This document shows positions 49,671-52,409 of a stretch of 64,000 bases of DNA, piece after piece. The notes below the pieces were generated by a model. It ran no database searches, was not told the origin of the DNA, and was given only the letters and a program-made list of their open reading frames with translations. This DNA comes from Blepharisma stoltei ATCC 30299 (lineage: Eukaryota; Protista; Ciliophora): the NCBI GenBank assembly GCA_965603825.1, contig CBFDEM010000023.1, positions 620,001-684,000 on the forward strand, in the 5' to 3' direction. The translations under genes were made by a program, and so were the position numbers. Positions within the stretch are counted from its first letter, which is position 1; each line of letters starts with the position of its first letter.

Positions 49671-50450
49671 TTTTTTAATTTTTATGCCATCTAAAACAGC
49701 TAAAGATCAGGATTTTTATTAGAGTCATAAAATTAAAAAATTAGAGGATTTTAGGTAGATACTAATATTTGTAATAAAAATAAGTGAAAAATTGCATAGC
49801 GCCTGAGACTAATTATGAATTTAATTAAAATCATGCATAGCATCCATTAGTATATATATTTAAAATAGGCCATTAAAGATGTTTTATCTAGTTTGTAAGA
49901 CTATCGTTTTGCAAAATTATTTAAAAATATTTTATTGGCTATGTGAAGACCTATTGATCAGATTTTTGAAATCTGAGACTCAGAAAAAAGGTCATAATTA
50001 ATTAAATCATATTGAAATAATCACCTTATTAATTAGAGCATCTTAATTGATACCGATTTTATTGCTATTTTGATTTTTTCTGTTCCCAGTAATTTTTGTC
50101 ATTTAATTTGAAATTTAAATTTTTTGATTGAGCTCAGAATTCCACATTTTTGCACAAAACTGCAAAACTGCCTACTCTTGATATATTTTTATCAATAATA
50201 ATCTGTAAATAAAAAATACAAATGCTTATTAGTTCATTTAAATTAATTTATTGTTTTCAAAAGCTGACCATATTATTTGCATATTTATTAGTTGCTGTTT
50301 TTACAGTGTTATTTATAATTGATTCATTTAAATATAGTCTTTAATAAGAAATAATATTTTTAAGACTTTTTAAAATAATTAACACTTTATTTCTATTTAT
50401 AATTTTTATTTCAATTTTATGATTAAATTAAATTTTACAATTTTATATAC

Positions 50451-51365
50451 ATGGAACAATCCCGCTATATAAGAGTTCGATTTTTAGGGAAAGGTACATA
50501 TGGAGAAGTACATCTCTACACTGACACCCAAACTGACACAAATGTGGCCATAAAAACCATCAAAGTCTTACAAGAAGGAGAAGGCATCCACTTTACAGCT
50601 TTGCGCGAAATCATGATTTTACAAGAGCTGATTCATCCAAACATCATACGTCTTCATGATGTTTTTTATAAAAATTCGAATATCAATTTAGTATTAGAGC
50701 TAGCAGAAAGTGCCTTAAATGATGTAATTCATTTGACTAGCGATGAATCAACAACCAAAGGCTTGCTTAAACAATTACTAGAAGGTCTAGCATTTATGCA
50801 TGAGAATTCAGTGATGCATCGGGATTTAAAACCAGGAAATTTATTAATTTCAAGGAATGGGCAAATAAAAATCACTGATTTTGGGACAGCAAAAATTGTC
50901 TGTGATGTAGAAGCGCCCAGAACTACTGGAGTCTGCACACTGTGGTATCAGTCTCCTGAGCTGCTATTTGGCACCAAACATTATGGAAAAGCTATGGATA
51001 TGTGGTCAGTTGGATGTATTTTTGCGGAAATGATTAATAAAGAACCATTTTTGAAAGGAAATACTTCTATAGACCAAATCAACAAAATTTTTAATACACT
51101 AGGAACCCCAGGAGAAGAAGACTGGAAAGGAATGAATATTCTTCCCAATTATTGACCATCCCCCGCATCCCCACGAATTTCCTTTGTAAGAGCCTTCCCT
51201 ACAGCTAGCAATGAGGCGAGAGATCTACTAGAAAAAATGCTTATGTATGACCCTAGACAAAGAATTTCTGCATCCCAAGCGCTTCAGCATCCATATTTTT
51301 CCACAGGAGAGCCTCATGCATCCTGTGGAGATATAGCAAGAATTTTAAGCAATTATATAAGATAA
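50451..51365 (+). CDS. CDK7/CDKD-like cyclin-dependent kinase, 304 aa
   Basis: GKGTYG, EGIHFTALREI (CDK7/CDKD-type helix), HRDLKPGN, DFG and PELLFG; extended through TGA 51153 to TAA 51363-51365. Confidence 0.85.
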
Positions 51366-51380
51366 TTTTACTAATAAATA

Positions 51381-52376
51381 CTACGGCGAAACTTGCCCAT
51401 TGCTTCTCTTCTGGAAAAATTTCAGCAGATTTGGCCCTTTCAGCAGCGAAATGCTTGCATCTCTCTTTATATAAGCTTCTCCTTTATTCGAAAAATAAAT
51501 TTCATTTTTATCTCCTTTTTTTACCTTAATCTCAATCACATACAAGTCATTGATCCTCTGCCCATCTTTTCCATGGACATTAGCAAAATTAATCTGATAG
51601 TCATCAGCACTTAAATGTGGGGTAAATGCATTAAGCACTGAATCAATAATTGTGCTAAACTGATCCCTTAATTTTCTAGTCAGCGTAACCCCATTTACCA
51701 GTCCATCATCTCTAATCCCATAAAATAAAGTCCCGCCTTGTGTATTTAGAAAGGCACATATATAAGGGGTAATTAAATCAACCGCTAGGTTTGGGTTAAA
51801 GACTTTGCCTGAGCAGGCTTTAAATTCTGTATGTCTGTCTTCGAATTTTTTTACCTCTTCTTTGAGAACATAATACCCACGCTCACTGGGGAGTCTTTTT
51901 AGATCAGGCATTCTAACTTCTACAGGCACCGAAGTTTCTTTTTTAGCGATAGGTTTAGCCTGAAGAGGCGTTTCGCTTTCGCTTTCAGACTCGTAGCCTT
52001 CGTTGTCGTGGTTGTGCTTGGTCATATTTTCTCGTAATAGCTGAAATTGGTAGCGCTCTTCTGGAGAATGAAAATAAGGGCACGATATAAATGTGCAGGA
52101 AATGCCAAGTTTGCGGTTTACGCACTCTCTGGTTTTAAAATTCTGAGGATGATAGATATACTCGTTAAAATTTCTGCAGAACTTACAGGTTTCATGCAAA
52201 CAATGGTCGGACGTGATCGAGTCTAAACAAAGAATGGGCTCATATGATAAGTTTAAAGTCCGCCGACGGTCTGTTTCGTCGTGAAAAAATGTGCAGTACT
52301 CCTTTTGGCTGCATTCCTGGTTCTTTAGGATGCTGTTACATTGTTTTGTCTTGTAAACTTTCCAAACACTTTCCAT
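51381..52376 (-). CDS. Unkempt-type CCCH zinc fingers fused to a Schlafen/AlbA_2 domain, 331 aa
   Basis: YKTKQC..C..CTFFHDETDRRR and EYIYHPQNFKTREC...CPYFHSPEE, then FEDRHTEFK and ICAFLNTQGGTLFYGIRDDG.V.G. Likely start is ATG 52376. Confidence 0.85.
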   Translation of the reverse strand: MESVWKVYKTKQCNSILKNQECSQKEYCTFFHDETDRRRTLNLSYEPILCLDSITSDHCLHETCKFCRNFNEYIYHPQNFKTRECVNRKLGISCTFISCPYFHSPEERYQFQLLRENMTKHNHDNEGYESESESETPLQAKPIAKKETSVPVEVRMPDLKRLPSERGYYVLKEEVKKFEDRHTEFKACSGKVFNPNLAVDLITPYICAFLNTQGGTLFYGIRDDGLVNGVTLTRKLRDQFSTIIDSVLNAFTPHLSADDYQINFANVHGKDGQRINDLYVIEIKVKKGDKNEIYFSNKGEAYIKRDASISLLKGPNLLKFFQKRSNGQVSP

Positions 52377-52409
52377 TAAAAGTATCTTATATGCTAATTT
52401 TACAATAAT

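What the first reader, a model, noticed from the sequence alone, without database searches (positions are those of the whole stretch)
51381..52376. Unkempt-type CCCH RNA-binding fingers fused to a Schlafen RNase domain with an intact E-x4-E-x-K motif
The C-terminal domain has FEDRHTEFK and CAFLNxxGGxLxxGxxDDGxVxG, hallmarks of Schlafen/AlbA_2 nucleases (tRNA-cleaving SLFN11/13, the nematode piRNA-processing PUCH, prokaryotic defence Schlafens). Coupling to sequence-specific CCCH fingers suggests a targeted endoribonuclease. In a ciliate it could act in small-RNA biogenesis for genome rearrangement, in mRNA decay, or in antiviral defence. I know of no description of this fusion, and it is my best candidate for a novel system here.
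Basis: partly seen in the sequence, partly recalled or inferred. Interest (0 to 1): 0.85.

Follow-up and report, generated by a model that had tools for sequence, protein, structure and literature searches.

The report
Ciliate zinc-finger Schlafen RNA nuclease
Ciliates carry a conserved, apparently undescribed protein that joins an RNA-gripping zinc-finger module to a Schlafen-type RNA-cutting domain with an intact active site, so it is probably a targeted RNA nuclease that can be tested directly in Tetrahymena and Paramecium.

Summary
Window 52376-51381 (minus strand) is one 331-aa ORF in the Blepharisma stoltei somatic genome; contigs of four probable RNA runs cover it without gaps. Residues 1-106 model as an Unkempt three-finger module (Z 12.4, rmsd 1.9 A to ZnF4-6); residues ~161-325 are one Schlafen/AlbA_2 domain (Pfam E 8e-19; Z 16.0 to SAMD9). 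E179, E184 and K186 align with SLFN14 residues needed for cleavage; D223 is also kept. One correction: finger 2 lacks its histidine ligand in nearly all fusion relatives. The fusion is pan-ciliate: two Blepharisma paralogues, Paramecium, Tetrahymena and Protocruzia. Of 50 representatives, 33 keep E-E-K-D. An ankyrin-containing variant sits on probable chlamydial contigs. Low copy number and divergence equal to the neighbouring NOC3 gene favour a regular cellular role over an arms-race immune gene. Most likely it is an oligomeric, metal-dependent endoribonuclease aimed at RNA by its fingers; activity, substrate and timing are untested, and nothing links it to genome rearrangement. Ten literature searches found no description; two key papers were unreadable. 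The scan had noted this locus and its paralogue before. Verdict: new variant of a known kind.

The parts
51381..52376 (-). Single-exon gene, 331 aa, Unkempt-type zinc-finger triple plus one Schlafen/AlbA_2 domain
   Evidence: ORF; contigs of four probable RNA runs cover it without gaps or joints, X1 51353-52373 in one piece; 74-76% identical syntenic orthologue in a second TGA=Trp species
52059..52376 (-). Unkempt-type three-finger module, aa 1-106
   Evidence: AlphaFold2 pLDDT 92; VIA Z 12.4, rmsd 1.9 A over 103 aa to 5ELK and Z 10.2 to 5ELH; profile E 3.6e-21
52278..52358 (-). Finger 1, canonical C-x8-C-x5-C-x3-H (C13, C22, C28, H32)
   Evidence: C13, C28, H32 invariant in 42 rows
52170..52247 (-). 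Finger 2, atypical: C50, C59, C64, C67, His ligand replaced by R68; cysteines lost in Paramecium and Tetrahymena relatives
52065..52142 (-). Finger 3, C-x8-C-x4-C-x3-H (C85, C94, C99, H103)
   Evidence: 39-41 of 42 rows keep each ligand
51897..52004 (-). Variable, probably disordered linker (aa 125-160), acidic at its start
   Evidence: pLDDT under 50 at 124-140; length differs widely among relatives
51402..51896 (-). Single Schlafen/AlbA_2 domain, aa ~161-325
   Evidence: PF04326 E 7.9e-19; Foldseek E 2.7e-9 to SLFN12; VIA Z 16.0 to SAMD9, 12.6 to SLFN12 and SLFN5
51819..51842 (-). Catalytic E-x4-E-x-K motif (E179, E184, K186)
   Evidence: aligns with SLFN14 E206, E211, K213, needed for cleavage (PMC12135189); motif defined in PMC13056530
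51708..51710 (-). D223, third carboxylate of the active site
   Evidence: aligns with SLFN14 D249; invariant in alignment A2; catalytic role of the equivalent SLFN11 D252 is from memory

Best explanation
A conserved ciliate endoribonuclease in which the Unkempt-type finger module binds a short single-stranded RNA motif and, through a flexible linker, brings a single Schlafen domain to cut nearby in a metal-dependent way. Because it has one Schlafen lobe, it probably works as a homo-oligomer or with a paralogue, active or dead. The most likely job is post-transcriptional control: cutting selected mRNAs or other cellular RNAs. Shown: gene, probable transcript, both folds (predicted), catalytic residues, conservation. 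Inferred: RNA binding, cleavage, oligomer, substrate class.
For: Folds. Catalytic residues match SLFN14; 33 of 50 fusion representatives keep E-E-K-D and 4 more E-E-K-N. Fusion kept in heterotrichs, Paramecium, Tetrahymena and Protocruzia, and both PF04326 loci of this genome are such fusions. Fingers 1 and 3 are as conserved as the active site. Unkempt ZnF4-6 binds UAG in mRNA with sub-micromolar to micromolar affinity and Unkempt represses translation (PMC4358403, PMC11436793). dN 0.154 with saturated dS equals NOC3 (0.154), synteny kept for both paralogues. Other single-domain Schlafens act as oligomers: PUCH trimer, RorSlfn5 hexamer, Cash filament.
Against: No biochemical data. Most characterised Schlafens cut tRNA or rRNA, not mRNA. 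The two domains have no predicted fixed orientation (pTM 0.58). Unkempt base-reading residues recalled from memory (Q288, R310) are not kept (I74, F96), so the RNA motif cannot be transferred. SLFN5 shows that the fold does not guarantee tRNA cleavage (own knowledge). 13 of 50 relatives have lost the motif.
Confidence: 0.5

Rival explanations
1. A latent tRNA or rRNA nuclease for stress or defence: the fingers act as a sensor of foreign or aberrant RNA and switch on a Schlafen that shuts down translation, as in sensor-fused bacterial Schlafens and SAMD9.
For: Best structural match is the SAMD9 tRNase domain (Z 16.0). Sensor plus Schlafen is the rule in bacteria. The same protein search returns Schlafen fused to NB-ARC, WWE and a GCN2-like kinase. 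Probable chlamydial contigs carry a variant.
Against: Only two copies in this genome, kept synteny, rate equal to a ribosome-biogenesis neighbour; 89-90% identity among three Tetrahymena species. No PADLOC match. Transcript seen in all four runs.
Confidence: 0.27
2. A small-RNA processing enzyme like nematode PUCH, cutting precursors of development-specific small RNAs that guide genome rearrangement, possibly with catalytically dead paralogues as partner subunits.
For: PUCH is built from single-Schlafen subunits, one active and one lacking catalytic residues (PMC10567574). 13 of 50 relatives look catalytically dead. The family is pan-ciliate.
Against: No expression-timing evidence; no mention in the supplement of the Blepharisma somatic genome paper. 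Known ciliate scan RNAs are made by Dicer-like enzymes (own knowledge). Both Blepharisma paralogues are catalytically intact; no membrane anchor like that of SLFL-3/4 is evident in the model.
Confidence: 0.12
3. An RNA-binding regulator whose Schlafen domain mainly binds nucleic acid or mediates oligomerisation and rarely cuts.
For: Several subfamilies keep the fold but lost the catalytic motif.
Against: E179, E184, F185 and K186 are at least 90% conserved in the 86-row alignment and intact in all close relatives.
Confidence: 0.07
4. A pre-rRNA processing nuclease co-regulated with NOC3, to which it lies head to head.
For: Start codons are 33 bp apart here and 9 bp apart in the second Blepharisma-type species; Schlafens can cut rRNA.
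Against: The neighbourhood is not kept in other heterotrich-type loci or in the paralogue; tight head-to-head spacing also occurs with an unrelated gene in L004.
Confidence: 0.04

Closest known systems
Vertebrate SLFN11/12/13/14 RNase domain
   Same: Same fold as the catalytic C-lobe, same E-x4-E-x-K motif and downstream Asp.
   Different: One lobe instead of a two-lobed pseudo-dimer; no SWADL linker or helicase domain; N-terminal Unkempt-type fingers instead.
SAMD9/SAMD9L AlbA_2 tRNase domain and bacterial Avs9
   Same: Single AlbA_2 domain; best structural match, Z 16.0 over 164 aa.
   Different: No SAM, SIR2, STAND NTPase or TPR; 16% identity.
SLFNL1 (vertebrate stand-alone Schlafen-like 1)
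   Same: One C-terminal Schlafen domain with conserved catalytic residues, function unknown (PMC12492265, PMC10567574).
   Different: N-terminal part is not a CCCH module (RRM-like from memory; RRM plus AlbA_2 clusters seen).
PUCH (TOFU-1, TOFU-2, SLFL-3/4) of C. elegans
   Same: Single-Schlafen subunits, active and dead, acting as an endoribonuclease.
   Different: Trimer with a mitochondrial membrane anchor, cap-dependent; no fingers; no orthology shown.
Prokaryotic Schlafens (pSlfn5, Cash, SLFN-pAgo)
   Same: Ex4(E/D)xK nuclease fused to an accessory module; oligomeric.
   Different: Accessory module is a phage or second-messenger sensor; here it is a eukaryotic RNA-binding finger triple.
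Unkempt (UNK/UNKL) and related plant AtC3H23-type tandem zinc fingers
   Same: Same compact three-finger fold.
   Different: One triple rather than two, no RING, finger 2 lacks His, nuclease attached; UAG specificity cannot be assumed.
Regnase-1/ZC3H12A (own knowledge)
   Same: Same logic: CCCH finger plus endoribonuclease for targeted mRNA decay.
   Different: Unrelated NYN/PIN nuclease fold and a single finger; analogy only.

Membership tests
Schlafen/AlbA_2 domain superfamily (PF04326) | Profile score over the curated cut-off | tested here: met
   68.8 bits against 25.3
Schlafen/AlbA_2 domain superfamily (PF04326) | Schlafen core fold | tested here: met
   Predicted model: Z 16.0 SAMD9, 11.6-12.6 SLFN5/11/12, next unrelated 5.2
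Catalytically active Schlafen RNases | Ex4(E/D)xK motif plus downstream Asp | tested here: met
   E179, E184, K186, D223 align with SLFN14 206, 211, 213, 249
Catalytically active Schlafen RNases | Metal-dependent RNA cleavage | not testable with these tools
   needs purified protein
Vertebrate clustered SLFN family | Two-lobed RNase domain with SWADL linker and optional helicase | tested here: not met
   only the catalytic lobe aligns; 331 aa in all
SAMD9/9L | SAM, SIR2, STAND NTPase, TPR and OB domains around AlbA_2 | tested here: not met
   none found
PUCH subunits | Heterotrimer with membrane-anchored SLFL-3/4 acting on capped piRNA precursors | not testable with these tools
   no complex prediction or substrate assay available; no membrane helix evident in the model
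Unkempt-type three-finger module | Compact fold of three clustered fingers with YKT..C and YHP motifs | tested here: met
   Z 12.4, rmsd 1.9 A; profile E 3.6e-21
Unkempt-type three-finger module | Three complete CCCH ligand sets | tested here: not met
   finger 2 has Arg at the His position; only 5 of 42 rows have His there
Unkempt (UNK) orthologues | Six fingers and a C-terminal RING | tested here: not met
   three fingers, no RING; other B. stoltei genes carry one to three triples, several ending in a RING-like Cys pattern, without Schlafen
Unkempt (UNK) orthologues | Binding to UAG | not testable with these tools
   structure paper not held; recalled base-reading residues only partly kept

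The most novel reading that the evidence does not exclude
Ciliates have an ancestral, sequence-programmed Schlafen endoribonuclease, with active and dead paralogues as subunits, that makes or destroys a defined RNA class such as development-specific small-RNA precursors; protist-infecting chlamydiae have captured the module to act on host RNA. It would be the first Schlafen whose cut site is chosen by a fused sequence-specific finger module.
Probability: 0.2. Interest if true: 0.85.

Novelty: new variant of a known kind. Interest (0 to 1): 0.62.

Why it matters
Characterised eukaryotic Schlafens are all animal proteins in the literature searched. A conserved family in ciliates with orthologues in two genetic models (P. 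tetraurelia GSPATT00029501001 and GSPATT00024817001; a 679-aa T. thermophila 'divergent AAA domain protein' on scaffold GG662691) makes it possible to ask what Schlafens do outside animal immunity, and whether stand-alone Schlafens such as SLFNL1 descend from ordinary RNA-processing enzymes. A small nuclease with a separable RNA-targeting module would also show how Schlafen specificity can be set by a fused reader. The probable chlamydial copies suggest that symbionts of protists took up the module.

Tried and rejected
Frame or code artefact: rejected, the ORF has no TGA, TAA or TAG inside and is kept in other species. Chance fusion or mis-joined genes: rejected, single ORF, single contig across both domains, 50 non-redundant relatives. 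Bacterial contamination: rejected, flanked by a CDK-type kinase and NOC3, syntenic in a second species. Conserved gene neighbourhood: only within Blepharisma-type loci. Viral origin: no fusion in viral contigs; only plain Schlafen folds in BFVD. Chlamydial variant in GTDB genomes: only ankyrin matches. NCBIfam and PADLOC gave nothing. Ten paper searches found no description. Expression timing: no hit in the Blepharisma genome paper supplement or the Paramecium expression supplements, where the atlas file is cut and uses other gene ids. Murn 2016 and Burroughs and Aravind 2020 were not held, so an earlier computational mention is not excluded. A dimer model could not be run. Trees are quick searches with weak deep support.

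Full report
Source and gene. The window is G000:C23:620001-684000 of a 41.5-Mb, 64-contig assembly. The paralogue found in the same assembly is letter for letter a protein named Blepharisma stoltei, CAG9314208.1, and long reading frames in the window need TGA as a sense codon, so this is the B. stoltei somatic genome. The finding is one ORF, 52376 to 51381 on the minus strand, 331 aa, with no TGA inside. It lies tail to tail with a CDK-type kinase and head to head with NOC3, start codons 33 bp apart. Contigs of four runs from one study, guessed to be RNA, cover the gene without gaps or joints; one contig spans 51353-52373, across both domains, and none lies on the intergenic stretch 49700-50315. 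That pattern fits an unspliced transcript, but the tool does not record these runs as RNA and contigs give no level or timing.

Schlafen domain. Residues 179-309 match PF04326 at E 7.9e-19. The best solved-structure hits by sequence are SLFN14, SLFN12, SLFN13 and SLFN5. The AlphaFold2 model (mean pLDDT 88) gives Foldseek E 2.7e-9 to SLFN12 and VIA Z 16.0 to the SAMD9 domain, 11.6-12.6 to SLFN5, SLFN11 and SLFN12, with unrelated folds at 5.2 or less. In the alignment E179, E184, K186 and D223 fall on SLFN14 E206, E211, K213 and D249. E206 and E211 are the catalytic centre of SLFN14, and a K213A/R214A mutant loses cleavage (PMC12135189). The Ex4(E/D)xK motif is required in bacterial Schlafens too (PMC13056530; PMC13462974). 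The role of the Asp rests on my memory of SLFN11 D252. Only the catalytic lobe is present.

Finger module. Alone, residues 1-125 score below Pfam cut-offs. A profile of 42 relatives hits Unkempt ZnF4-6 at E 3.6e-21 and ZnF1-3 at 4.5e-10. The domain model (pLDDT 92) aligns to 5ELK at Z 12.4, rmsd 1.9 A over 103 residues, and to 5ELH at Z 10.2; the next hit is 3.7. Fingers 1 and 3 are canonical and nearly invariant. Finger 2 has lost the His ligand in almost all fusion relatives; in heterotrich-type members C67 or H61 could replace it, and in Paramecium and Tetrahymena its cysteines are mostly gone. From memory, Unkempt ZnF4-6 contacts RNA through Q288, F289, R310 and F316; the aromatic pair maps to Y75 and Y101, while the polar pair maps to I74 and F96. 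I could not read the structure paper. RNA binding is therefore likely, but the UAG preference of Unkempt (PMC4358403, PMC12136788) cannot be assumed.

Family. The genome has two PF04326 loci and both are such fusions; six other genes carry Unkempt-type triples without Schlafen. Both paralogues have syntenic orthologues in a second TGA=Trp species. A profile search of 1.84 billion representatives returned many proteins with both modules: 50 non-redundant ones, of which 33 keep E-E-K-D, 4 have E-E-K-N and 13 are otherwise altered. The search was seeded with the fusion, so these counts show breadth, not frequency. Named members are in Paramecium (two P. tetraurelia genes, GSPATT00029501001 and GSPATT00024817001), Tetrahymena utriculariae, T. 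thermophila and T. malaccensis, and Protocruzia adherens. Several apparent non-fusion neighbours are truncated gene calls whose cluster mates have the fingers. Three more intact loci came from metagenomes. On a quick tree of finger modules the fusion label needs 5 changes against 23 for shuffled labels, and one origin is not ruled out; the ciliate-type fusions fall apart from the other Unkempt-type genes of B. stoltei. The Schlafen-domain tree puts most of them in one weakly supported group (SH-aLRT 81) but some elsewhere. An origin early in ciliates is the simplest reading, not a proven one.

Rate. Against the second species the gene has dN 0.154 with saturated synonymous sites, the same as NOC3 (0.154) and lower than the next RRM gene (0.245); the paralogue is faster (0.357). 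Tetrahymena orthologues are 89-90% identical. Purifying selection, two copies and kept synteny fit a regular cellular function better than a fast-evolving immune gene, though they do not exclude defence.

A variant outside ciliates. Proteins with a winged-helix-like region, the same finger triple, ankyrin repeats and a Schlafen domain lie on gene-dense, bacterial-looking contigs: two in tandem beside a MYG1-HIT-isochorismatase operon (L021) and one beside folP-cdaA-ybbR-rsmE (L092). The named close relatives of that CdaA include two Parachlamydiaceae proteins at 80-82% and one labelled Micropruina at 84%, so these are probably environmental chlamydiae, with that conflict noted. Some keep the catalytic motif (P0045, P0119), others do not. 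They were not found in GTDB genomes or viral contigs.

How it most likely works. Shown: a transcribed-looking single gene, two well-modelled domains joined by a disordered linker, an intact active site, deep conservation of both modules together. Inferred: the fingers bind a short single-stranded motif and the Schlafen domain cuts nearby with Mg or Mn. Other single-lobe Schlafens act as oligomers (PUCH trimer, RorSlfn5 hexamer, Cash filament), so self-association or pairing with a paralogue is likely; dead relatives could serve as partners as TOFU-1 does. I put targeted cutting of cellular RNAs such as mRNAs at 0.5, a sensor-switched tRNA or rRNA nuclease at 0.27, PUCH-like small-RNA processing at 0.12, a non-cutting regulator at 0.07 and pre-rRNA processing at 0.04.

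Comparison and novelty. It is a member of the Schlafen/AlbA_2 superfamily by profile, fold and motif. It is not a clustered vertebrate SLFN, not SAMD9 and not an Unkempt orthologue. It works by analogy like Regnase-1 (own knowledge) or SLFNL1-type proteins, which pair an RNA-binding part with one nuclease domain. Ten full-text searches found no paper on this architecture or on ciliate Schlafens; the one mention is a 273-aa T. thermophila 'divergent AAA domain protein' in a ciliary proteome table, matched there to SLFNL1 (PMC10522465), whose architecture I could not check. Databases name family members either as C3H1-type or as Schlafen AlbA-2 proteins, so the combination is implicit in automatic annotation. 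Burroughs and Aravind 2020 was not readable, so an earlier computational mention remains possible. The scan itself noted this locus and its paralogue before; those notes are not independent support.

Verdict. A real, conserved, apparently uncharacterised Schlafen architecture across ciliates with a probably active site and ready orthologues in model species. New variant of a known kind; interest 0.62.

Noticed in passing
L089:5054-5941 (G000:C11 about 1057053-1057985, +): Paralogue of the same architecture, 312 aa, catalytic motif intact, 48% identical; evolves faster than the window gene (dN 0.36 against 0.15).
   Followed up: yes
L021:3527-8148 and L092:926-3817: Winged-helix-like region, Unkempt-type triple, ankyrin repeats and Schlafen domain in one protein, on probable environmental-chlamydia contigs; tandem pair in L021. 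L093 carries a similar gene on a gene-dense contig of unknown origin.
   Followed up: partly
protein P0044: Three repeats of the finger triple plus ankyrins and a C-terminal U-box, related to the chlamydial-type finger modules, without Schlafen.
   Followed up: no
protein P0120: GCN2-like kinase (RWD, kinase, HisRS-like) fused to a Schlafen domain and an NB-ARC-like NTPase; source unknown.
   Followed up: no
proteins P0030, P0007, P0033: Schlafen fused to WWE domains, P0030 also with classical CCCH fingers; parts recall ZAP/PARP13. Sister group to the heterotrich-type fusions in the quick tree.
   Followed up: no
proteins P0065, P0078, P0135, P0064, P0066: Other Schlafen fusions among the hits: cold-shock domain (one with UBA), RRM, NB-ARC.
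   Followed up: no
window 52377-52409; L003:5992-6000: Start codons of this gene and NOC3 are only 33 bp apart here and 9 bp apart in the second species, so 5' leaders must be tiny or overlap.
   Followed up: partly
G000 C20, C56, C15, C53, C41, C1 (L011-L020): Six B. stoltei genes with one to three Unkempt-type triples, several ending in a RING-like Cys pattern, although Unkempt orthologues were reported as limited to animals (PMC4358403).
   Followed up: partly
T. thermophila I7LVP2 (PMC10522465): A 273-aa Schlafen-domain protein listed in the wild-type ciliary proteome and absent in FAP256A/B knockouts; relation to this family not checked.
   Followed up: no
protein P0017: 2337-aa protein made of about 20 repeats of a partial Schlafen motif; may be an assembly or annotation oddity.
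   Followed up: no
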